DNA of 9,219 nt from IMGVR_UViG_3300020479_000030:1-9219, one strand, 5' to 3'; counted from the stretch's first letter, positions 1 to 9,219 are shown. Notes: generated from the sequence alone by a model not told the origin. Program-made: numbers and translations.

Positions 1-1214
1 CCATTAGCATAGATAAGACTTATAATAGCAGGTGTTTTTTGGAACAGTATCTGATATATTGTTACAGTCATATTTGACGGTGTACCGGAAAATGCTACTA
101 CATACCCTGGTTCCGCTACTTTCATTTCTAACAGATTTTGAATAGGCTGTGACGTGATAATTGAGTTAGTGCTTCTTATATATGCATACACAGTAAAGGT
201 TATCCCATTTGCTGTTATTTGCTGATAGCTAGGAAATATTATAGCACCATCAAAGTAAATAGCCCTAGCAGTACAATAGATATTATTTAAACTTTGCAAT
301 AAAGTTACTGTTAGAGTGTTAAGATCAATTGAGTAAATATTTAGATCATTCCAATATCGATTAGCATTTTGATTATATGGTACATATGCTAATAATTCAG
401 CTGTTATATTGCCATTATTATAAATATAGTTGAGGAATAACTGAGGCATTTCGGTATTCTGTACAGTATCTATCATATATACTGTTCCTACATTAGTTGG
501 GCTACTTGGGAAAGATTGAGCAAATGGTATTTCATCATAAGGGATAACCCATACATATGGGCTTAAGTTTCCATCTTGCCCGCCAAAGTAGAACACACCA
601 TTATAGAGCACGCCATAGGTAGGATAAATATAGAATTGACTCGGGGCATTTGACGGATATAACAATGCAAAAGACCACCCAGTAGTAACTGATAGATTTG
701 TTATTAATTGTTGTAGTTGACTGAAGGGAATAACAAAAATAGATAAAACCCCAGGTGATAATGCACTATCAATAAGATATACGTTTTGGTTTTCAAAATC
801 GATTATAATATCCATTAATTGTGTTGTGATATCATTCCAAGGAATTGGTGTACATGACCAATTGAAGGAGTTACTATTTGGGTCATATACTCCTAGCCAA
901 GGCCCACAACAAGACGAAGCATTGCACATACATTGCCCACCACCACATATACCACCACCAACAATAATAGTACTTGCGAACCATAGTGGTGGTGTAAGTA
1001 TTGTTAATACGTTACAATCACACCCCCATTCTTGTTGATTTGAAGAACCTATAATTTGCCCTACTGTAACACCATAACCATTGGGTGCATAATCGAATAT
1101 TATCGCCGGTAATGTAGGGTTAAGCACGACAGCACGTCCTAGTCCATTATAATAAAAATCCGGAAATGCTGTTACCCCGTCCAGTTCGGATATTTTTTGT
1201 AGTGTAAGCGACAT
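1..1214 (-). CDS. Large beta-rich protein (>=404 aa, 3' end outside window); putative virion terminal/receptor-binding protein, possibly a beta-propeller
   Basis: Not in ORF track. Open frame from ATG at 1214 to the window edge: MSLTLQKISELDGVTAFPDFYYNGLGRAVVLNPTLPAIIFDYAPNGYGVTVGQIIGSSNQQEWGCDCNVL...GVLYNGVFYFGGQDG...IYSIDLNTLTVTLLQ...IISLIYAN. GTGA SD and TTTATTTA box upstream. Rich in Y/I/V/T/N/P, very few K/R, several N-x-S/T sequons. The ORF is secure; the function is inferred. Confidence 0.8.
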   Translation of the reverse strand, partial: MSLTLQKISELDGVTAFPDFYYNGLGRAVVLNPTLPAIIFDYAPNGYGVTVGQIIGSSNQQEWGCDCNVLTILTPPLWFASTIIVGGGICGGGQCMCNASSCCGPWLGVYDPNSNSFNWSCTPIPWNDITTQLMDIIIDFENQNVYLIDSALSPGVLSIFVIPFSQLQQLITNLSVTTGWSFALLYPSNAPSQFYIYPTYGVLYNGVFYFGGQDGNLSPYVWVIPYDEIPFAQSFPSSPTNVGTVYMIDTVQNTEMPQLFLNYIYNNGNITAELLAYVPYNQNANRYWNDLNIYSIDLNTLTVTLLQSLNNIYCTARAIYFDGAIIFPSYQQITANGITFTVYAYIRSTNSIITSQPIQNLLEMKVAEPGYVVAFSGTPSNMTVTIYQILFQKTPAIISLIYAN

Positions 1215-1290: not shown

Positions 1291-1309
1291 AAAAAACTTT
1301 ATATACTTG
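1291..1309 (+). promoter_or_regulatory. Archaeal BRE+TATA promoter core (AAAAAACTTTATATACTTG), copy 1
   Basis: A-rich BRE followed by TTTATATA at 1298-1305, 42 nt before the ATG at 1340; identical 19-mer at 2642-2660. Confidence 0.8.
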
Positions 1310-1339
1310 GGTAATACTAATTTACATAGAGGGATAAAA

Positions 1340-1624
1340 ATGGGTCAACTCTTCAATGAATTAAGTAGTTATATAAAAAACAAAAATATGAACGCAATAT
1401 ACGCGGAAATTGTAACCCGAGTGGCGTATCTAGGCTTAGGGATTTTAGAACGCGGAGAGTTTCTAAATGCTGTCGTTCAATCTGACAGTAATAATCCTTT
1501 CAATCAAAAGATAGTAGTAACATTAGGGCTACCACACTACATAGTAACAGTTACTGTAGACCAAAATGATAATATAAGTTACAAAATAACGACAGTTTAT
1601 GACCCAACAAAACAAATACTTTAG
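1340..1624 (+). CDS. Hypothetical 94-aa alpha/beta protein (possible early gene)
   Basis: The track start (TTG at 1307) lies inside the promoter core; ATG at 1340 has a GAGGGA SD. No family recognised. Confidence 0.75.
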   Translation: MGQLFNELSSYIKNKNMNAIYAEIVTRVAYLGLGILERGEFLNAVVQSDSNNPFNQKIVVTLGLPHYIVTVTVDQNDNISYKITTVYDPTKQIL

Positions 1625-1626
1625 AG

Positions 1627-1818
1627 ATGGCGCGCATGAAACCAATCTCATTCAAAGTAGACAGTGAAACATTAGATATAATCGAGCTTTATGCGAATCT
1701 CAAAAAGATAAGCAGAAGCGAAGCAATAAGGGATCTAATATGGCAAGGTTTCAAATGCTACCAAGAAAAAGAAAACAAAAGAATACAGATAAAAGTTGAA
1801 CGAATGAAATTGTTATAA
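1627..1818 (+). CDS. Ribbon-helix-helix (CopG/MetJ-Arc type) transcriptional regulator, 63 aa
   Basis: PISFKVD strand, SETLDIIELYANLKK helix, ISRSEAIRDLI helix with the canonical SRSE.IR motif. Confidence 0.88.
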   Translation: MARMKPISFKVDSETLDIIELYANLKKISRSEAIRDLIWQGFKCYQEKENKRIQIKVERMKLL

Positions 1819-1827
1819 GAAAAATAT

Positions 1828-1860
1828 AAAAAGAAAAAGCTTTTGTCTTTTTTCTCTTTT
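1828..1860. terminator. Bidirectional A-tract/T-tract terminator between convergent genes
   Basis: AAAAAGAAAAAGCTTTTGTCTTTTTTCTCTTTT between the stops at 1818 (+) and 1883 (-), giving U-runs on both transcripts. Confidence 0.6.
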
Positions 1861-1882
1861 GCTCTTACCTATTGTTCATTGA

Positions 1883-2176
1883 TTAACTGGTTTCTTCTAA
1901 ATATTCGCTATATTCTAGCCCTATTGTTATCAACAATATAAAGCCCATAGCCATTAACCCTAACGCTACTGGGTTTAATATCACTGAGCCATTTTGTAGA
2001 TTTACACTAATCCCCAAGAAGTATATAGCAAAAAATGCCAAGAAGCCGATACCTAGCCCTAAGAAGAATCCTCTAATTATCCTTACTCCTAATCTGCTTT
2101 TCTTTCCACCGGGAGATGGCTGACTCATTATGAAACCTAGCGCGCCTAGCACTACTGGGTTTATTCCGATTCTCAT
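1883..2176 (-). CDS. Small integral membrane protein (about 97 aa, 2 clear TM helices); candidate envelope protein
   Basis: Hydrophobic segments GFFLGLGIGFLAFFAIYFLGISV and PVALGLMAMGFILLITIGL, with a basic KKSR..R..R patch before TM1. ATG at 2176 is preferred because the track's GTG (2185) forms a GTGA SD for it. Confidence 0.75.
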   Translation of the reverse strand: MRIGINPVVLGALGFIMSQPSPGGKKSRLGVRIIRGFFLGLGIGFLAFFAIYFLGISVNLQNGSVILNPVALGLMAMGFILLITIGLEYSEYLEETS

Positions 2177-2210
2177 AGCTATCACAATATTAATTCAGTA
2201 TTCTAGTATT

Positions 2211-2615
2211 TTAATCTGTGAGTATTTCAACACCTTTGGCATGATAAAATTCATTCACACTTATAAGGTAGTGGTTTCCTCTGTCTTGCAATTGGTCTAA
2301 GGTAAAGAAGTACCATGATCTTGAACTGTCTATGTACACAGCAATAAATGCCTTGCCCCCAGTCAGTTGTTCCGCTTCTTTTAGCTTAGCAATTTGATTT
2401 TTGTCTATCGGAATAGAGTCCTTTTCCCTTCTTCTTTTCACTTCAAAAAGAAGAATGAGATTTCTCTTTATTGCAATAACATCAACTATAGGATAATGCA
2501 CAACTTTAGAACCCGAACCCGGCGCTCTTGCTACAAAATATCCCCTGCTATATAGCAATTTCATTAACCTATATTCCGCGTACCTACCTCTTGCTTTTGC
2601 TTTCGCTTTATTCAC
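2211..2615 (-). CDS. hjc: Archaeal Holliday junction resolvase (Hjc/Hje, PD-(D/E)XK nuclease)
   Basis: G-x3-E (GRYAE), GYFVARAPGSGS, VDVIAIK and FEVK motifs typical of Hjc. GTG start about 23 nt after a TTTTATA box, so probably leaderless. Confidence 0.92.
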   Translation of the reverse strand: MNKAKAKARGRYAEYRLMKLLYSRGYFVARAPGSGSKVVHYPIVDVIAIKRNLILLFEVKRRREKDSIPIDKNQIAKLKEAEQLTGGKAFIAVYIDSSRSWYFFTLDQLQDRGNHYLISVNEFYHAKGVEILTD

Positions 2616-2693
2616 ATGTAATAGCTAAGGAAAAATTGTATAAAAAACTTTATATACTTGTGGTGAGTACTATATAGTGGATGTGGTGAGAAA
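2616..2693. promoter_or_regulatory. Back-to-back divergent promoters for hjc (-) and ORF159 (+); includes copy 2 of the 19-bp promoter core (2642-2660)
   Basis: The minus-strand TTTTTTATA box shares the 2642-2647 A-tract that acts as BRE for the plus-strand TTTATATA (2649-2656); GGTGAG SD before ATG 2694. Confidence 0.72.
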
Positions 2694-3173
2694 ATGGCTG
2701 AAACACAAAACCAAGAACAACAAAAAGAAAGAAGATGGTATAGTCTGAGTGTGCCAAAAGAAGTTATGAGCCTATTAAGGCAAATAAAAGGTAAATCTGG
2801 TCAAAATAAAGCCAATTGGAGAATTATTGTTGAAGCACTGTCTTTTTATAATAGTGTAATGAGTTCACCACGAAAACTAATGAAAGTTGATAATGTTGAA
2901 AAGGCATCATGGTACATCACAAAGTTATCTCTTGCTTACTCTAATTTTGCACTAAACCCAAATCAAGGCACTTATGCTAACTTTAAAGAAGTATGTGAAG
3001 AAATTGCGGTAAGGCTAGGTATCGATACTTCTGTATTATTAAGGTTAGCTGACGAATACTCAGCCCTGAAAGACGAAGAAAAAAGAAAACAAAAAAGGAT
3101 TGAGTTTAACCAAGCGGTAAAGATGCTAGTTAAGGAAATAATTCTTAATGTAGGGGGTAATGAAAATGATTAA
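2694..3173 (+). CDS. 159-aa protein with an N-terminal RHH-like DNA-binding domain and a helical C-terminal domain
   Basis: WYSLSV-P-KEVMSLLRQIK...NWRIIVEALSFY fits strand-helix-helix; strong promoter and SD. Function inferred. Confidence 0.65.
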   Translation: MAETQNQEQQKERRWYSLSVPKEVMSLLRQIKGKSGQNKANWRIIVEALSFYNSVMSSPRKLMKVDNVEKASWYITKLSLAYSNFALNPNQGTYANFKEVCEEIAVRLGIDTSVLLRLADEYSALKDEEKRKQKRIEFNQAVKMLVKEIILNVGGNEND

Positions 3174-3372
3174 CGGATTTGCCGAAGTATTCTTAATTTT
3201 AGCCATAGCAACTATAATTTACTTAATTATACTCAAAGTCACAGAGAGGCATGATGAACCGCAATACCCAGGGCTCATTTATGATGACGATGAATTATAC
3301 GATAATTTCTTCTACGTAGTTTTTGCGACAATAATAATTATTCTTATCCTTTTGATTTCAATTTTTGTGTAA
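3166..3372 (+). CDS. Small two-TM membrane protein with an acidic loop (68-70 aa)
   Basis: TM1 VFLILAIATIIYLIIL, loop YDDDELYD, TM2 FFYVVFATIIIILILLISIFV. The GGGGGT SD at 3153-3158 spaces better to ATG 3166 than to 3160; overlaps the end of the upstream gene. Confidence 0.7.
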   Translation: MINGFAEVFLILAIATIIYLIILKVTERHDEPQYPGLIYDDDELYDNFFYVVFATIIIILILLISIFV

Positions 3373-3381
3373 GACTAAAGG

Positions 3382-3396
3382 AAAAAATATTTTTTT
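3382..3396. terminator. Palindromic bidirectional terminator AAAAAATATTTTTT between convergent genes
   Basis: Perfect 14-bp palindrome (3382-3395) between the stops at 3372 (+) and 3395 (-). Confidence 0.6.
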
Positions 3397-3958: not shown

Positions 3959-3979
3959 AATTTAATTTACGTGGTTTTG

Positions 3980-3995
3980 CGAAATAAATATTTCG
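3980..3995. promoter_or_regulatory. Perfect inverted repeat CGAAATA-aa-TATTTCG overlapping the TATA box of ORF187; putative operator
   Basis: Arms at 3980-3986 and 3989-3995; the minus strand reads CGAAATATTTATTTCG. Confidence 0.55.
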
Positions 3996-4079
3996 TTTAT
4001 GTTATCGGTTCTACTATTAATTTAATTTTCCAAAATATACGGATTGAAAGTAACAGTTTTTTTCTAGATTATAATGGAT

Positions 4080-4187
4080 TTCCTTATAGAATTCCAAATG
4101 GAATTGGTTAAGAAATTTGCTATGAAATTAGTTAAGAAAATGGTTAAGAAAATCGAATAAAAATTCCTTATAGAATTCCTTAGCAAA
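4080..4187. repeat. Degenerate tandem array of nine 12-bp units
   Basis: TTCCTTATAGAA/TTCCAAATGGAA/TTGGTTAAGAAA/TTTGCTATGAAA/TTAGTTAAGAAA/ATGGTTAAGAAA/ATCGAATAAAAA/TTCCTTATAGAA/TTCCTTAGCAAA; an exact 16-mer TTCCTTATAGAATTCC occurs at 4080 and 4164. Confidence 0.85.
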
Positions 4188-4195
4188 TTATTTAC

Positions 4196-4531
4196 CTAAA
4201 AAATTGGGGTACCGCTTGGTTTATTTTTTGACTTTTTCTTTGTAATATCTCTGTAAAATTGAGAAAATATCCCATCTGCTACACTTTGCCCTAATGCTTT
4301 CTTAAAATCTGTTACACATTGGTCAATAGGGTAATCTTTATTACAACTTGCTAACTGTGCTGATACTGCTTTACATATTTTTGTTAATAGAGCATCAAGT
4401 TCTTCGTCTGTCATGTTTCCGCTATAATACTCAGATGACACTCTTCTCATTAAAATCATTAATTGTGTCTCTTCGCTTTCCATTTGGCAATTTCTAAATA
4501 GATTTTGAATAAGTTGATTCATAGCCATCAT
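4196..4531 (-). CDS. Hypothetical helical protein, 111 aa, with 4 Cys and a basic C-terminal tail
   Basis: ATGA overlap with the upstream 48-aa RHH gene, GAGGAG/GTGA SD upstream; last gene of a three-gene minus-strand operon. Confidence 0.78.
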   Translation of the reverse strand: MMAMNQLIQNLFRNCQMESEETQLMILMRRVSSEYYSGNMTDEELDALLTKICKAVSAQLASCNKDYPIDQCVTDFKKALGQSVADGIFSQFYRDITKKKSKNKPSGTPIF

Positions 4532-4674
4532 GGTTGTTCACTCTCCTCTTTCTCCAAGAATTCTGTTATTATAATAAGTAATAAATCTTCAACAGTTACG
4601 CCTCTTTTATCAGCCAATTTTCTAAGCCTATCTATCAGAACAGCAGGCGCTATTATGTGTAATTCTTCTGACAT
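4528..4674 (-). CDS. 48-aa ribbon-helix-helix (CopG-like) protein
   Basis: Not in ORF track. MSEELHIIAPAVLIDRLRKLADKRGVTVEDLLLIIITEFLEKEESEQP*; AGGTG SD upstream, fills the gap between 4688 and 4531, and its stop overlaps the next ATG. Confidence 0.82.
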   Translation of the reverse strand: MSEELHIIAPAVLIDRLRKLADKRGVTVEDLLLIIITEFLEKEESEQP

Positions 4675-5026: not shown

Positions 5027-5156
5027 TTAAAAATACATTCAGAAAAAAATAAATGTTGCTCACGGAAACACTATCATCTGTGTTCTTTTTCTAGCTTATT
5101 CTTATGTTTTCAAATGCGCTAACTCACACTTTTTGTGTGTTTTTGCTACTGAGTGC

Positions 5157-5164
5157 TTTAAATA
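5157..5164 (+). promoter_or_regulatory. TATA box (TTTAAATA) of the capsid operon
   Basis: Consensus Sulfolobales TATA 44 nt before ATG 5201, followed by a GAAGGTAAGG SD. Confidence 0.7.
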
Positions 5165-5200
5165 TGTGAAAGGGGAATTATTATTCGAAGGTAAGGAACC

Positions 5201-5557
5201 ATGGCTATATCCCACACACTAGAGGAAATGGTAAGCAAATACACAGCGAAGATGAACCCCCAACAGGTCGGTAGCCGTTATCAGAACTCTAAGACGGTAG
5301 CAGTAAATAGATATATGCAAGGATTCTACCCATTCATGGCTGTAATACCCCTAGTAAAGAACATATTAGAGTCTAACGGTGTTTCCGCAGGCAAGCAAGG
5401 GCAATACTTCGCTTTTGTATTTCAGTTAGTAAAAGAAGCACAAAAACACAGCCTACAAGAATTAGCTAATATCAGCGCAGGTTTACAACAAAAATTCACA
5501 ACTGAAGGATGCGACCCATCAATATTAAGTAAATTAGCTAACCTAGTAGTAGGGTGA
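5201..5557 (+). CDS. Major capsid protein 1 (SIRV2/AFV1-fold, A-DNA-coating helical capsid)
   Basis: Nearly gapless alignment with the downstream MCP (MAI, KY..K, KNIL...G...G..G.Y.AF..Q, DPS.L...A...G); pattern matches the rudivirus/lipothrixvirus coat protein four-helix bundle. Confidence 0.88.
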   Translation: MAISHTLEEMVSKYTAKMNPQQVGSRYQNSKTVAVNRYMQGFYPFMAVIPLVKNILESNGVSAGKQGQYFAFVFQLVKEAQKHSLQELANISAGLQQKFTTEGCDPSILSKLANLVVG

Positions 5558-5570
5558 GGGGGTGAAATAA

Positions 5571-5945
5571 ATGGCTATAGTTAAAAATCTGGGTCAAGCA
5601 GTAAACAAATATCAATTGAAATATGACGGTACGAATGTAACTAATAGGCTTACGGCGTTAGGTAGCCTAGTAGAAGAGAACTACGAAACCGGCGTTAGCG
5701 TTACTTACAATGCTGTAGGTATTGCTAAGAACATATTAGCTAACTTAGGAATTCCGCCAGGTCACTGGGGTTACTACATAGCATTTGCAGAGCAAGTAGC
5801 AAGATATACCGTACACTATGGTGGACAGACACTACAACTTAGAGTTAGTGCATTAATGTCCTACTACGTAACAGCATATCAAGCTGACCCAAGCGTTTTG
5901 ACTCAAATAGCCCAGGCAATTATCGGAACAGCACCACCTTACTAA
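5571..5945 (+). CDS. Major capsid protein 2 (SIRV2/AFV1-fold)
   Basis: C-terminal LMSYYVTAYQADPSVLTQIAQAIIG resembles the recalled SIRV coat protein LKGYYISAFNANPQVLDAVVNIITG; strong GGGGGTGA SD. Confidence 0.9.
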   Translation: MAIVKNLGQAVNKYQLKYDGTNVTNRLTALGSLVEENYETGVSVTYNAVGIAKNILANLGIPPGHWGYYIAFAEQVARYTVHYGGQTLQLRVSALMSYYVTAYQADPSVLTQIAQAIIGTAPPY

Positions 5946-5975
5946 CCTCTAATCTGACCTAACCATAAAAGCTAT

Positions 5976-5989
5976 ATTTTTTTATTTTT
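5976..5989 (+). terminator. T-tract terminator of the MCP operon (may overlap the leaderless promoter of the GT gene)
   Basis: TTTTTTTATTTTT about 30 nt after the MCP2 stop. Confidence 0.5.
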
Positions 5990-6000
5990 ACTATTTCTAT

Positions 6001-7635: not shown

Positions 7636-7768
7636 GCAAAACTTTTTCAATTTTTTGATTTGGTGACAAATCTGCCCACAACTTTGGGGTGCAAAATAGG
7701 GGCAAGATTGACCACATGTTACTCACTTTTTTTTAATTCAGCTGATACAAGTATTATTTAGAGGAGTC

Positions 7769-9219
7769 ATGAGTAGTGATAACTCTAAACTTGAGTTATT
7801 CACGATAGACGATATTAACTTTATACTTGATGCCATACACAAGGCTAATGCTGACTCTGACGAATTCATAATAGTACCTGAAGGTTTCAGCCTTGATGAA
7901 ATGGCTAGTGCATTACATGGTATCACTGACCCTATAGGTCAGATAGAGAGTTGGCTACAGAGTACGCTTAACCAAATTGCATCATGGCTAACTTCAGCCG
8001 TTTCAACAATGTTAAGCCCATTTGTTTCCGGTGTACAACAGTTCCTTAATGGAATAGTAAGTACATTAGAGAGTATTCCACAGTTGTTCACGCCAATAGG
8101 AGAAGGATTTGAAGCAATAACGAATTGGCTTAGTAGCTTCTTTACAAATCTACAAAGTGTTCTGAGTAATGCATTTCAGACGCTAGGCGTTACTTTAGAG
8201 AAATTCTTCAAGCCCGTAGGAGAGGCATTTTCAAAATTAGAGGACTTTATTACTAGTTTTGTAAATAAATTTGGTGATCTGATAAAGACCGCTACCGGTG
8301 ATTTGCAAAAAGGTATAGAACAAATTATAAAGCCAATAGGTGACGCGCTATCTAAATTAGGACAAGGAATTGAGAACTTTTTCGGAAATATCAGTAATAC
8401 ATTAAAGGCTATTGTCAGCGATTTGCAAAAAGGCTTAGAGAGTGCTTTAAAGCCTATTGTAGATACATTAACTAAATTAGAAAGTGGAATAGAGAACTTT
8501 TTCACTAAATTTGGAGATACACTAAAGACCATTTTCGGTGATATCGAAAAAGGCTTAGAGCAAGTGCTTAAACCTATATCTGATGCTATAGCCCATTTAG
8601 AACAAGGAATAGTTCAATTTTTCGGCGAAATTGGTAATACATTAAAGCAAATTTTAGGCGGAATTCTACAAAAAGTATCTAGTCTATTTGAAGATTTTGT
8701 AAATGTATTTAAAACCTTTGGTAAGGATATATCTGACTTCTTTACTACCTTTGAAAAGAAAATAGCAGGGATATTTAGTAGTATAGCCGATGACATAAAG
8801 AAGTTTTTCGAACCACTAACAAATGCGTTTAAAACAATCTTTAAGGATGTTGATACATTCTTCGGAAACCTTGGTAAGGTATTCAAAGAAGTTTTGAGCG
8901 ATATAACTAAAGGGATAACTGACTTCTTTAAGCCCGTAGTTGACTTCTTTACGGGGTTATTTGATAAGATTACTCAATTCTTTAAGCCCGTGATAGCGTT
9001 TTTCGAAGGGGCATATGATAAGCTTAAAGAGGTATTTTCGCCACTTATACATTTTTTTGACGTATTAGGGAAAGATATAATTGACTTCTTTAAGAACCCC
9101 GCTGGAACAATAAAATCATGGTTTAGCGATATAGGAAAAGATATAGAAAACTTCTTTAAGCCGGTAATTGATGTCTTCAAATTTGTATATAACGGAATTG
9201 AAGATGTAATAAAGAGCCC
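7769..9219 (+). CDS. Large amphipathic-helix repeat protein (>=483 aa, 3' end outside window); tape-measure/apolipoprotein-like
   Basis: Not in ORF track. ATG 7769 with a GAGGAG SD, open to the window end: MSSDNSKLELFTIDDINF...KPIGDALSKLGQGIENFFGNISNTLKAIVSDLQKGLESAL...KPVIDVFKFVYNGIEDVIKS. W/F residues recur at 11- and 18-residue spacing. Confidence 0.88.
   Translation, partial: MSSDNSKLELFTIDDINFILDAIHKANADSDEFIIVPEGFSLDEMASALHGITDPIGQIESWLQSTLNQIASWLTSAVSTMLSPFVSGVQQFLNGIVSTLESIPQLFTPIGEGFEAITNWLSSFFTNLQSVLSNAFQTLGVTLEKFFKPVGEAFSKLEDFITSFVNKFGDLIKTATGDLQKGIEQIIKPIGDALSKLGQGIENFFGNISNTLKAIVSDLQKGLESALKPIVDTLTKLESGIENFFTKFGDTLKTIFGDIEKGLEQVLKPISDAIAHLEQGIVQFFGEIGNTLKQILGGILQKVSSLFEDFVNVFKTFGKDISDFFTTFEKKIAGIFSSIADDIKKFFEPLTNAFKTIFKDVDTFFGNLGKVFKEVLSDITKGITDFFKPVVDFFTGLFDKITQFFKPVIAFFEGAYDKLKEVFSPLIHFFDVLGKDIIDFFKNPAGTIKSWFSDIGKDIENFFKPVIDVFKFVYNGIEDVIKS
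8090..9219 (+). repeat. In-frame coding repeats: seven 120-nt (40-aa) units, then 54/54/54/66/54-nt (18/22-aa) units
   Basis: Unit starts at 8090 (TP), 8210, 8330, 8450, 8570 (KP), 8690 (ED), 8810 (EP), then 8930, 8984, 9038, 9092, 9158, 9212; recurrent TTCTTTAAGCC and GATTTGCAAAAAGG DNA motifs. Confidence 0.88.

What the first reader, a model, noticed from the sequence alone, without database searches (positions are those of the whole stretch)
1291..2696. Two identical 19-bp promoter cores define a co-regulated gene class; candidate early/anti-defence cassettes
Seen: AAAAAACTTTATATACTTG at 1291-1309 and 2642-2660, each followed by GGT..TACTA, an SD and AAAATG 42-45 nt from the TATA. Each drives a two-gene unit containing an RHH-type gene (ORF94+RHH63; RHH-like ORF159+TM68). 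Established: in Sulfolobales viruses, early anti-CRISPR/anti-defence genes share strong conserved promoters and often pair with small DNA-binding proteins. Inference: ORF94 (1340-1624) is an Acr/anti-defence candidate with an Aca-like RHH partner.
Basis: partly seen in the sequence, partly recalled or inferred. Interest (0 to 1): 0.6.

Follow-up and report, generated by a model that had tools for sequence, protein, structure and literature searches.

The report
Shared archaeal-virus promoter, two regulator operons
Two short operons in a fragment of a new filamentous archaeal virus start from the same 19-bp strong promoter core, a pairing that related viruses keep; the operons mostly encode small DNA-binding regulators, and the idea that one product (ORF94) disarms host defence is reasonable but has no direct support.

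Summary
AAAAAACTTTATATACTTG occurs exactly twice (1291-1309, 2642-2660, + strand). It is the longest exact repeat in the window and exceeds chance. It is an archaeal core promoter: a purine-run BRE, the TATA box TTTATATA and 4 more nt. Each copy lies 42-45 nt upstream of an SD-led ATG.

The window is a whole 9.2-kb metagenomic record (about 15% of a genome) of a new Ligamenvirales-like virus. Ten related contigs show both units are syntenic and conserved. In three lineages the two promoters share a lineage-specific BRE/TATA module that other promoters of the same genome lack. A real promoter class is therefore supported.

The class mainly drives DNA-binding proteins:
- RHH63 is a genuine RHH protein.
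- ORF159 is a conserved gene with a probable N-terminal RHH domain and a four-helix bundle.
- ORF159's promoter also carries a near-invariant palindrome, ACTATATAGT, over the predicted start site. This suggests autorepression.

ORF94 is a clade-restricted helix-plus-sheet protein with no known relative or fold. It diverges fast only over long distances. Its promoter has no conserved operator.

The Acr/Aca reading is a legitimate application of a published method, but it is unproven (about 0.2). By that method's own rules ORF159 is a low-probability candidate. No expression data could be obtained.

The parts
1291..1309 (+). Promoter core, copy 1 (P94): purine-run BRE 1291-1296, C 1297, TATA box TTTATATA 1298-1305, CTTG 1306-1309. 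Predicted transcription start about 1327-1329.
   Evidence: Exact match. Longest repeat in the window. BRE/TATA conserved upstream of the ORF94 homologue in L015, with 3 mismatches. The start site is inferred from the usual archaeal spacing between TATA box and start site.
1340..1624 (+). ORF94: first gene of unit 1. A small protein with two helices and a four-stranded antiparallel sheet, function unknown, found only in this virus clade.
   Evidence: No Pfam, PHROG or PADLOC family. Only one relative among 1.84 billion representatives (P0016, 71% identity). Homologous to the 98-102 aa proteins at the same position in L012, L017 and L008. AF2 pLDDT 57 and Atlas model pTM 0.70. Best fold match Z 6.3, which is below the tool's noise level.
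1627..1818 (+). RHH63: ribbon-helix-helix DNA-binding protein, second gene of unit 1. The probable true start is ATG 1636 (60 aa). It has a conserved C-terminal tail, IKVERxKL.
   Evidence: PF01402 RHH_1, E 1.2e-5, above the gathering score. PHROG repressor families. PDB profile hits to NikR, CopG, the Rv0298 antitoxin and SvtR 2KEL. Alignment A4.
1841..1860 (+). T-rich stretch after unit 1, a candidate archaeal terminator.
   Evidence: Read directly from the sequence. The function is inferred.
2642..2660 (+). Promoter core, copy 2 (P159): BRE 2642-2647, TATA box 2649-2656, in the divergent gap between Hjc(-) and ORF159(+). Predicted transcription start about 2678-2680.
   Evidence: Exact match. 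A BRE/TATA at this place is conserved in all ORF159 orthologue promoters. TATAAA-N4-TTTATA symmetry straddles the BRE and is kept in L010.
2669..2678 (.). Perfect 10-bp palindrome ACTATATAGT, at about -10 to -1 of the predicted start of the ORF159 transcript. Candidate operator.
   Evidence: Present once per contig, always at this position, in 8 of 9 distinct ORF159 orthologue promoters, while the BRE and TATA box vary. Absent from the ORF94 promoters.
2694..3173 (+). ORF159: first gene of unit 2. A conserved gene of this clade with a probable N-terminal RHH domain (about residues 14-56) and a C-terminal four-helix bundle (about residues 60-155).
   Evidence: Orthologues at 44-66% identity in 9 of 9 contigs covering the site, always divergent from Hjc where the upstream flank is held. 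AF2 with the family alignment gives pLDDT 74, above 90 in the bundle. hhalign of the N-terminus against an RHH profile gives 34% probability in the correct register. Atlas feature and structure neighbours are dominated by RHH families. No Pfam family. Fold hits are generic.
3160..3372 (+). It overlaps the end of ORF159.
   Evidence: Translation. Weak PHROG membrane-protein hit, E 0.004. Small two-helix ORFs occupy the same position in L008, L013 and L019 without detectable sequence similarity.
3390..3396 (+). Run of seven T after unit 2, a candidate terminator. It overlaps the stop codon of the convergent ORF187.
   Evidence: Read directly from the sequence. The function is inferred.
2211..2615 (-). 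Holliday-junction resolvase (Hjc), transcribed divergently from ORF159. Context gene that marks the conserved block.
   Evidence: PF01870, E 7e-18. Orthologues at 55-60% identity.
3..1214 (-). ORF404: Cys-rich protein transcribed divergently from ORF94, with its own TATA-like box near 1253-1262. Context gene at the edge of the conserved block.
   Evidence: Its homologue in L015 is only 35% identical. Nothing corresponds to it at this position in L008, L012 or L017.

Best explanation
The 19-mer is the core of a virus-specific strong archaeal promoter: a purine-run BRE for TFB, the TATA box TTTATATA for TBP, and four flanking bases. It heads two short rightward operons in a new Ligamenvirales-like filamentous virus.

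Shown:
- The two promoters are one class. The class is conserved in position across relatives, co-varies within lineages, and differs from the structural-gene promoters.
- The class drives mainly small DNA-binding proteins: RHH63; ORF159, which probably combines an RHH domain with a helical bundle; and, in relatives, further single and tandem RHH proteins.

Inferred:
- This is a regulatory gene class, probably early, transcribed by the host machinery without help from the virus.
- The ORF159 promoter carries a second, gene-specific control. A near-invariant 10-bp palindrome lies over the predicted start site. An RHH dimer, most likely ORF159 itself, would bind it and block polymerase recruitment, giving negative autoregulation.
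- The perfect 19/19 identity in this genome goes beyond what function requires. The similarity runs on into spacer bases that are not conserved in the closest ORF94 promoter. It is therefore best explained by recent homogenisation (recombination or conversion) between the two promoters.

ORF94 is the one non-DNA-binding, clade-restricted product of the class. Its function is unknown, and anti-defence is a possibility, not a result.
For: Repeat and promoter features:
- The repeat is exact and beyond chance.
- It matches the published description of strong early promoters: TTTAWATA preceded by a purine-rich BRE with A at -3.

Promoter class:
- The best local match between the ORF94-type and ORF159-type promoters of one genome scores 19 (window), 15 (L008, which uses TTTTTAAG in both) and 12-14 (L012 and L017, ATAGATAA + TTTATATA).
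- Cross-lineage pairs score 5-11. Other promoters of the same genome score 5-10 (12 for the Hjc upstream region of L008, which reads the same divergent gap in reverse).
- L012 and L017 have a third copy in front of an RHH-like 101-105 aa gene and a zinc-ribbon gene.
- Capsid-gene and large-gene promoters have a pyrimidine-rich ACT[CG]A[CG]T-like element in place of the purine BRE.

Products:
- RHH63 is RHH.
- Relatives add a tandem double-RHH protein.
- The ORF159 N-terminus shows an RHH-compatible topology and RHH neighbours.

Operator:
- ACTATATAGT is present in 8 of 9 orthologue promoters, once per contig.
- L019 is the one orthologue without it. L019 alone changes three otherwise invariant residues of the N-terminal domain (K to E, G to N, E to K).

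Homogenisation:
- The spacer between TATA box and SD in the ORF94 promoter is not conserved between the window and L015, yet in the window it resembles the ORF159 promoter (GGT.A.TACTA).
Against: - There is no expression or start-site data, so timing, promoter strength and start sites are all inferred.
- Only two copies can be seen, because about 85% of the genome is missing.
- The within-lineage co-variation rests on three lineages. L012 and L017 are near-duplicates, and L015 and L010 may not come from one genome.
- With TATA-anchored ungapped flanks the within-genome excess is modest: 14-16 of 28 positions, with one cross-genome pair also at 16.
- The RHH assignment of ORF159 is not established. 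There is no Pfam hit, the first whole-protein profile comparison failed, the focused one gave only 34%, and the Atlas scores are below that tool's own 0.9 threshold.
- The link between palindrome and ORF159 rests on co-occurrence plus a single exception.
- A palindrome at -10 to -1 could instead be a sequence-constrained proximal promoter or initiator element rather than an operator.
Confidence: 0.6

Rival explanations
1. Both units are early anti-defence cassettes. ORF94 is an anti-CRISPR or other anti-defence protein, and RHH63 is its Aca-like repressor that shuts off the shared promoter after the early burst.
For: - Shared strong promoters are a published, experimentally backed predictor of anti-defence genes in Rudiviridae and Lipothrixviridae, and some predicted candidates carry RHH or HTH domains.
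- ORF94 is the first gene of its locus, small, and without homologues outside the clade among 1.84 billion representatives.
- It is the fastest-diverging shared gene over long distances: 21-28% identity, against 44-68% for ORF159, Hjc and the coat proteins.
- It is always followed by a tightly coupled RHH gene.
- It lies at the boundary between the conserved block and a variable left flank.
Against: - No similarity to any known Acr or anti-defence protein by sequence, profile or fold.
- No conserved inverted or direct repeat in the ORF94 promoter for an Aca to bind.
- Against the close relative L015, ORF94 is 70% identical, as conserved as the core genes and far more than the neighbouring ORF404 at 35%.
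- The gene is present in all 5 contigs that cover its position, so it is not sporadic.
- ORF159 is a conserved gene, and RHH63 and TM68 are downstream co-transcribed genes. The published pipeline calls both categories 'low probability'.
- No timing data.
Confidence: 0.2
2. No class at all. These are two independent promoters that each converged on the host's optimal BRE/TATA consensus. The 19-bp identity has no regulatory meaning beyond 'both are strong'.
For: - The identical stretch is exactly BRE + TATA + 4 nt, which is the footprint of host TFB and TBP.
- Each promoter has its own flanks: CTAATCC upstream of the ORF94 promoter, and AAAATTGTAT plus the palindrome in the ORF159 promoter.
- TTTATATACTT also occurs in the capsid-gene promoter of L011 and L014.
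Against: - Three lineages use three different BRE/TATA versions, and in each lineage both promoters carry the same version. Convergence on a single host optimum does not predict that.
- No other promoter in the same genomes has the module.
- A 19/19 identity is more than the degenerate consensus requires.
Confidence: 0.13
3. ORF94 and RHH63 form a physical pair, either a toxin-antitoxin-like module or a regulator with a co-regulator. The conserved C-terminal tail of the RHH protein would bind ORF94, and the complex would tune repression.
For: - The gene pair is conserved, with overlapping or adjacent stop and start codons, in five contigs.
- The tail IKVERxKL beyond the RHH fold is conserved.
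- The RHH63 family scores against RHH antitoxins such as Rv0298.
Against: - ORF94 matches no toxin family.
- The RHH gene of L008 lacks the tail.
- There is no positive evidence that the two proteins bind.
Confidence: 0.07

Closest known systems
Virus-specific early / anti-defence-gene regulatory sequences of Rudiviridae, Lipothrixviridae and Bicaudaviridae (Bhoobalan-Chitty et al. 2024, PMC11065993)
   Same: - A strong core promoter (purine-rich BRE + TTTAWATA) is repeated within one viral genome in front of small, mostly uncharacterised genes.
- The flanks differ between viruses while the core stays similar.
- Some products carry RHH or HTH domains.
- Inverted repeats overlapping the BRE are described there for SMV2. 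One is seen here in the ORF159 promoter.
   Different: - Only two copies are visible here. The strict identity is 19 bp, and about 29 of 36 positions with two indels, short of the 30-100 bp motifs used there.
- Both copies head two-gene units inside the conserved block next to Hjc and the capsid genes, whereas published candidates are mostly single accessory genes near genome ends.
- One downstream gene (ORF159) is a conserved gene.
- Early expression is unknown.
- There is no homology to Aca8 or to any listed Acr.
Bacteriophage acr-aca operons
   Same: A small gene of unknown function is followed by a small DNA-binding repressor-type gene behind a strong promoter.
   Different: - Aca proteins are usually HTH proteins that bind inverted repeats in the acr promoter. 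Here the partner is RHH, and no conserved repeat exists in the ORF94 promoter.
- Acr activity is untested.
SvtR (SIRV1 protein 56B, PDB 2KEL) and other RHH repressors of crenarchaeal viruses and plasmids (for example pRN1 ORF56, PDB 2K9I)
   Same: - The RHH63 family scores against both in a profile search (E about 0.007).
- These are small viral RHH regulators that repress viral promoters (function taken from general knowledge of SvtR, not tested here).
   Different: - The sequence relationship is distant. NikR and CopG score better.
- The targets of RHH63 are unknown.
- ORF159 adds a four-helix bundle that these proteins lack.
Archaeal repressors that bind over the transcription start site (the MDR1, LrpA and Phr type of mechanism; general knowledge)
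   Same: The palindrome lies downstream of the TATA box, at about -10 to -1. That is the position from which such repressors block RNA polymerase recruitment without displacing TBP and TFB.
   Different: The binding protein is not identified, and the start site is predicted rather than mapped.

Membership tests
Anti-defence gene (ADG) as defined by the regulatory-sequence pipeline of PMC11065993 | Predicted strong promoter: purine-rich BRE directly upstream of TTTAWATA | tested here: met
   AAAAAA-C-TTTATATA at both sites. A at -3 is as in the paper's preference; -6 is A, not the preferred G.
Anti-defence gene (ADG) as defined by the regulatory-sequence pipeline of PMC11065993 | Regulatory sequence around the promoter shared within the same genome (motif width 30 bp or more, MEME/RSAT value below 1e-8) | tested here: inconclusive
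   19 bp are exact, and about 29 of 36 positions match with two indels. Only two copies exist in a fragment covering about 15% of the genome. MEME and RSAT were not available. Within-lineage sharing is reproduced in L008, L012 and L017.
Anti-defence gene (ADG) as defined by the regulatory-sequence pipeline of PMC11065993 | Single gene, or first gene of its locus; downstream co-transcribed ORFs count as low probability | tested here: met
   ORF94 and ORF159 are first genes. RHH63 and TM68 are downstream genes and so fall in the low-probability class.
Anti-defence gene (ADG) as defined by the regulatory-sequence pipeline of PMC11065993 | Not among the conserved core genes of the virus group | tested here: not met
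   This result is for ORF159. Orthologues occur in 9 of 9 contigs covering the site, at 44-66% identity, next to Hjc where the flank is held. For ORF94 the test is inconclusive: it is present in 5 of 5 contigs covering its site, but at only 21-28% identity in the distant lineages, and it is absent outside the clade.
Anti-defence gene (ADG) as defined by the regulatory-sequence pipeline of PMC11065993 | Expression immediately after infection | not testable with these tools
   No sequencing run was listed for the window. The virus has not been cultured.
Anti-defence gene (ADG) as defined by the regulatory-sequence pipeline of PMC11065993 | Homology to a known Acr, Aca or ADG family (supportive, not required) | tested here: not met
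   No tblastn hit in GenBank phage and archaeal-virus records. No Pfam, PHROG or PADLOC family for ORF94. No PDB hit by sequence or fold.
acr-aca operon | Downstream gene encodes a DNA-binding repressor | tested here: met
   RHH63 matches PF01402 above the gathering score and PHROG repressor families. Repressor activity itself was not tested.
acr-aca operon | Operator (inverted repeats) for the Aca in the acr promoter | tested here: not met
   No inverted or direct repeat near the core of the ORF94 promoter is shared by the window, L015, L012, L017 and L008.
acr-aca operon | Upstream gene inhibits a defence system | not testable with these tools
   Needs interference assays in a host.
Ribbon-helix-helix (RHH) superfamily: RHH63 | Profile match over strand, helix A and helix B | tested here: met
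   PF01402, E 1.2e-5, 25.5 bits against a cut-off of 20.5. PDB profile hits to NikR (7e-5), CopG and SvtR.
Ribbon-helix-helix (RHH) superfamily: ORF159 N-terminus | Profile or fold match to RHH | tested here: inconclusive
   No Pfam hit. The whole-protein hhalign failed. The focused hhalign gave 34% probability in the correct register. AF2 shows an extended segment plus two helices at pLDDT about 57. Atlas feature and structure neighbours are mostly RHH families, but below that tool's confidence threshold.
Ligamenvirales-type filamentous archaeal virus | SIRV2-type major capsid protein(s) | tested here: met
   Two paralogous coat genes. MCP2 matches PF12193 at E 3.9e-11, above the cut-off; MCP1 scores 24.8 bits, just under the 25.2 cut-off. 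MCP2 is about 30% identical to the coat proteins of SMRV1 and SRV.

The most novel reading that the evidence does not exclude
ORF94 founds a new anti-defence (for example anti-CRISPR) family, controlled by an RHH-type Aca, in a previously undescribed clade of two-capsid-protein filamentous archaeal viruses. Alongside it, ORF159 with its near-invariant palindrome forms a conserved autoregulatory switch that times the early-to-late transition.
Probability: 0.15. Interest if true: 0.6.

Novelty: new member of a known kind. Interest (0 to 1): 0.4.

Why it matters
Archaeal viruses have very few characterised anti-defence proteins and regulators. Promoter-sharing is currently the main route to finding them.

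This case shows the signal is real and conserved in an uncultured virus clade. It also shows the limit of the signal: the shared strong promoter here marks mainly conserved DNA-binding regulators, not obviously accessory anti-defence genes. That is a useful caution for promoter-based Acr prediction.

It also yields concrete, testable parts: a 19-bp core, a 10-bp candidate operator, two candidate RHH repressors, and one orphan protein.

Tried and rejected
- **Whole-genome motif scan:** impossible, because the record is only the 9.2-kb window.
- **Exact 19-mer in IMG/VR:** three hits, all chance matches inside bacteriophage coding sequence, for example a terminase-region gene.
- **GenBank phage and archaeal-virus records:** no nucleotide match. 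No tblastn match for ORF94 or ORF159.
- **Relatives in other collections:** IMG/VR gave none for MCP2 or the ORF159 family. No cellular genome among 185,579 species encodes an ORF159 relative.
- **Cmr5 lead:** one PADLOC hit for the ORF159 C-terminus (E 0.007). Rejected, because only 1 of 7 family members reproduces it, each member hits a different unrelated model, and no Cmr5 or Csm2 appears in the fold lists.
- **Fold searches:** ORF159 gives generic helical bundles only (no Foldseek hit at E 0.001 or better; best Z 11.8, below the level of about 13 that the tool gives for helical bundles). ORF94 gives a best Z of 6.3 (cystatin-like designed protein), below noise. Atlas structure neighbours of ORF94 are heterogeneous.
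- **Complex prediction, RHH63 with ORF94:** returned 'no answer'. It counts neither for nor against binding.
- **Sequencing runs for expression or start sites:** none was listed.
- **Rfam over the window:** nothing.
- **Palindrome as a second TATA box:** rejected. It lies only 16-23 nt from the ATG, so a start site about 26 nt downstream would fall inside the coding sequence, and there is no in-frame downstream ATG before the conserved domain.
- **Assembly artefact:** considered and judged unlikely, on general grounds rather than a test. A 19-bp repeat is shorter than typical assembly k-mers, and both copies sit in distinct, conserved contexts.
Full report
**What the window is.** The 9219-bp window is a complete public record, contig Ga0213457_127340 of JGI metagenome 3300020479. 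IMG/VR classes it as linear, and CheckV estimates it at about 15% complete. It encodes:
- two paralogous SIRV2-type coat proteins (5201-5557 and 5571-5945);
- a GT4 glycosyltransferase;
- a Holliday-junction resolvase, Hjc (2211-2615, minus strand);
- several small RHH proteins;
- the start of a very large repeat-built protein.

The coat protein is only about 30% identical to those of the rudiviruses SMRV1 and SRV, and nothing in GenBank matches at the nucleotide level. This is a fragment of an undescribed Ligamenvirales-like filamentous archaeal virus. Genes run off both ends of the contig, so neither end is a genome terminus.

**The observation.** AAAAAACTTTATATACTTG occurs at 1291-1309 and 2642-2660 on the + strand and nowhere else, even at three mismatches, where 0.04 copies are expected. 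It is the longest exact direct repeat in the window. None of 300 first-order Markov simulations reached 19 nt (mean longest 13.4, maximum 18). The RHH gene probably starts at ATG 1636 rather than 1627.

**What the 19-mer is.** It reads as a purine-run BRE (AAAAAA), then C, then the TATA box TTTATATA, then CTTG. That is the footprint of archaeal TFB and TBP. It matches the published description of strong early promoters of Sulfolobales viruses: TTTAWATA preceded by a purine-rich BRE with A at -3. With the usual spacing between TATA box and start site (general knowledge, not measured here), transcripts would begin near 1328 and 2679. That leaves 11-15 nt leaders that contain the SD. T-rich stretches follow each two-gene unit (1841-1860; 3390-3396).

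**Relatives.** The exact motif in IMG/VR hits only bacteriophage coding sequence by chance. Protein searches did find relatives:
- four ORF159 homologues and eight coat-protein homologues;
- one ORF94 homologue at 71% identity, among 1.84 billion representatives;
- two more contigs from the metagenome scan.

In total ten related contigs were read, L007 to L015, L017 and L019 (L016 and L018 are duplicates of L009 and L012). All come from the same JGI sample or from ENA assembly ERZ1684502. Gene order is conserved:
1. an ORF94-family gene plus an RHH gene, followed in relatives by a tandem double-RHH protein and a 190-211 aa protein;
2. a small membrane protein and Hjc on the minus strand;
3. 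ORF159, often with a small two-helix membrane protein;
4. a long non-coding gap;
5. a three-gene minus-strand operon that includes another RHH;
6. the two coat genes, the glycosyltransferase, two small genes and the giant repeat protein.

**Is there a promoter class?** Yes, on comparative evidence. I scored the best local ungapped match (+1 match, -2 mismatch) between 80-nt upstream regions.

| Comparison | Score |
|---|---|
| ORF94-type vs ORF159-type promoter, window | 19 |
| Same pair, L008 (both use AAAGATTTTTAAGCT) | 15 |
| Same pair, L012 and L017 (both use ATAGATAA + TTTATATA) | 12 and 14 |
| Cross-lineage pairs | 5-11 |
| Either promoter vs every other promoter of its own genome | 5-10 (12 for Hjc in L008) |

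The score of 12 comes from the Hjc upstream region of L008, which reads the same divergent gap in reverse.

- L012 and L017 carry a third copy in front of an RHH-like 101-105 aa gene and a zinc-ribbon gene.
- The coat-gene and giant-gene promoters differ. They have a pyrimidine-rich ACT[CG]A[CG]T-like element instead of the purine BRE.
- A stricter TATA-anchored count of flank identity gives a smaller margin: 14-16 of 28 within genomes, with one cross-genome pair also at 16.
- There are only three independent lineages, so I call the class supported, not proven.
- TTTATATACTT, the 3' part of the 19-mer, also precedes the coat gene in the closest relatives L011 and L014. The BRE is therefore the class-specific part.

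**Why 19 of 19?** In the closest relatives the two promoters differ from the window's 19-mer at 3 positions (L015) and 2 positions (L010), and from each other at 4 positions. The spacer between TATA box and SD of the ORF94 promoter is not conserved between the window and L015. Yet in the window that spacer resembles the ORF159 promoter (GGT.A.TACTA). This pattern fits a recent copying event between the two promoters in the window's lineage. That is an inference.

**A second element, specific to ORF159.** The perfect palindrome ACTATATAGT (2669-2678) lies at about -10 to -1 of the predicted start site.
- It occurs once per contig, always at this place, in 8 of 9 distinct ORF159 orthologue promoters, even where the BRE and TATA box differ.
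- It cannot be a second TATA box, because it is too close to the ATG.
- It is absent from the ORF94 promoters, which have no conserved inverted or direct repeat at all.
- L019 is the single orthologue without the palindrome. L019 alone changes three otherwise invariant residues in the N-terminal domain of the protein.
- The window and L010 also share a TATAAA-N4-TTTATA symmetry across the BRE.

The simplest reading is an operator bound by a dimeric protein, most likely ORF159 itself. This is inferred.

**The proteins.**

*RHH63* is a genuine RHH protein. It matches PF01402 above the cut-off and PHROG repressor families, and its profile hits NikR, CopG, an RHH antitoxin and SvtR of SIRV1 in the PDB.

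*ORF159* has no Pfam family.
- Folded with its family alignment, it shows a confident four-helix bundle (about residues 60-155, pLDDT above 90). The N-terminus is less confident: an extended segment plus two helices.
- Fold searches give only generic bundles.
- For the N-terminus, a whole-protein profile comparison failed.
- A focused comparison against thirteen RHH domains from these viruses aligned the strand and helix A in register at 34% probability.
- Atlas neighbours of residues 10-58, by features and by structure, are dominated by RHH families (CopG, BrnA, NikR, RHH_1, RHH_3, RHH_5, RHH_6), but below the tool's confidence threshold.
- I rate the RHH assignment as probable, not shown.

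*ORF94* has no family, no GenBank match and no PDB match. Its fold, two helices packed on a four-stranded sheet, matches nothing above noise. It is homologous to the 98-102 aa proteins at the same position in L012, L017 and L008.

**Evolutionary behaviour** (window compared with relatives; unless noted).

| Gene | Identity to relatives |
|---|---|
| ORF94 | 70% to L015; 21-28% to the distant lineages |
| RHH63 | 56% to L015; 32-34% to the distant lineages |
| ORF159 | 44-66% |
| Hjc | 55-60% |
| MCP1 | 57-75% |
| MCP2 | 64-86% |
| ORF404 (left neighbour) | 35% to L015 |

ORF404 is replaced by other genes at this position in L008, L012 and L017. ORF94 is therefore fast-evolving over long distances but ordinary over short ones. 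It is present in all five contigs that cover its position.

**Comparison with the known system.** That paper requires a strong promoter plus a shared surrounding regulatory sequence in the same genome. It explicitly moves ORFs among conserved core proteins, and ORFs co-transcribed downstream, into a low-probability list. By those rules:
- ORF94 qualifies as a candidate: it is the first gene of its locus, behind a strong shared promoter.
- ORF159 does not fully qualify, because it is conserved.
- RHH63 and TM68 are downstream genes.

The acr-aca analogy fails one tested feature, because the ORF94 promoter has no conserved operator. Timing could not be examined, since no sequencing run was listed. 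The complex prediction for RHH63 with ORF94 returned no verdict and is not used as evidence.

**Verdict.**
- The repeat is real and is a promoter core. A conserved, lineage-co-varying promoter class is supported.
- The class chiefly drives small DNA-binding regulators, with an extra candidate autoregulatory operator at ORF159.
- The anti-defence role of ORF94 remains a reasonable but unsupported hypothesis, at about 0.2.
- This is a new member of a known kind of system, virus-specific strong early-type promoters of crenarchaeal viruses, found in a new virus clade.

Noticed in passing
window 3959-4195; also L014 1055-1327, L012 4399-4728, L007 2244-2585, L013 2927-3239, L009 1132-1555: A 237-bp non-coding gap carries TTCCTTATAGAATTCC twice, flanking three GTTAAGAAA units. 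Every relative has a 270-420 bp gap at the same place with its own array of short degenerate repeats (for example CTCTGTA about 7 times in L013). These look like iterons, so the gap could be a replication origin or a regulator-binding array. Rfam finds nothing.
   Followed up: partly
window 5140-5200 and 7700-7768; L011, L014, L007, L012 and L013 equivalents: Promoters of the first coat gene and of the giant repeat gene share a pyrimidine-rich ACT[CG]A[CG]T-like element just upstream of a T-rich TATA box and lack a purine BRE. This may be a second promoter class, possibly for late or structural genes.
   Followed up: partly
window 5946-6000 and equivalents in L007, L011, L012, L013, L014: AAAAGCTATATTTTTTT is invariant between the stop of the second coat gene and the glycosyltransferase start in all six contigs. 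It may combine a terminator with an internal promoter.
   Followed up: no
window 5201-5945: There are two paralogous SIRV2-type coat proteins (29% identical to each other), and they are only about 30% identical to rudivirus coat proteins. Together with the lack of any GenBank nucleotide match, this points to an undescribed clade of filamentous archaeal viruses. It is represented by at least ten further contigs in JGI 3300020479 and ENA ERZ1684502.
   Followed up: partly
window 7769-9217 (open end); L011 2723-8524: A giant protein (more than 1934 aa in L011) is built of roughly 40-residue repeats with a recurring FFKP motif. Its function is unknown. A structural or terminal-filament role is plausible from its position.
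   Followed up: no
window 3-1214 (minus strand): ORF404 has a cysteine-rich patch (CDCN...GGGICGGGQCMCNASSCCGPW). Its L015 homologue is only 35% identical and lacks most of these cysteines, and other lineages have different genes at this position. It is a fast-evolving protein, possibly involved in adsorption.
   Followed up: partly
L019 370-596: This is the only ORF159 orthologue whose promoter lacks ACTATATAGT. It is also the only one with K to E, G to N and E to K changes at otherwise invariant N-terminal positions, which hints that the protein and its operator co-evolve.
   Followed up: partly
L009 193-253: The called start of the ORF159 orthologue in L009 is probably 60 nt too far upstream. 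The TATA box and palindrome lie inside the called ORF, and an in-frame ATG follows the palindrome at 253.
   Followed up: yes
window 4528-4674 (minus strand): A third small RHH protein (48 aa, Arc-like PHROG hit) sits in the conserved three-gene minus-strand operon that diverges from the coat genes. It is conserved at 42-71% identity in four relatives. This virus group is unusually rich in RHH regulators.
   Followed up: partly
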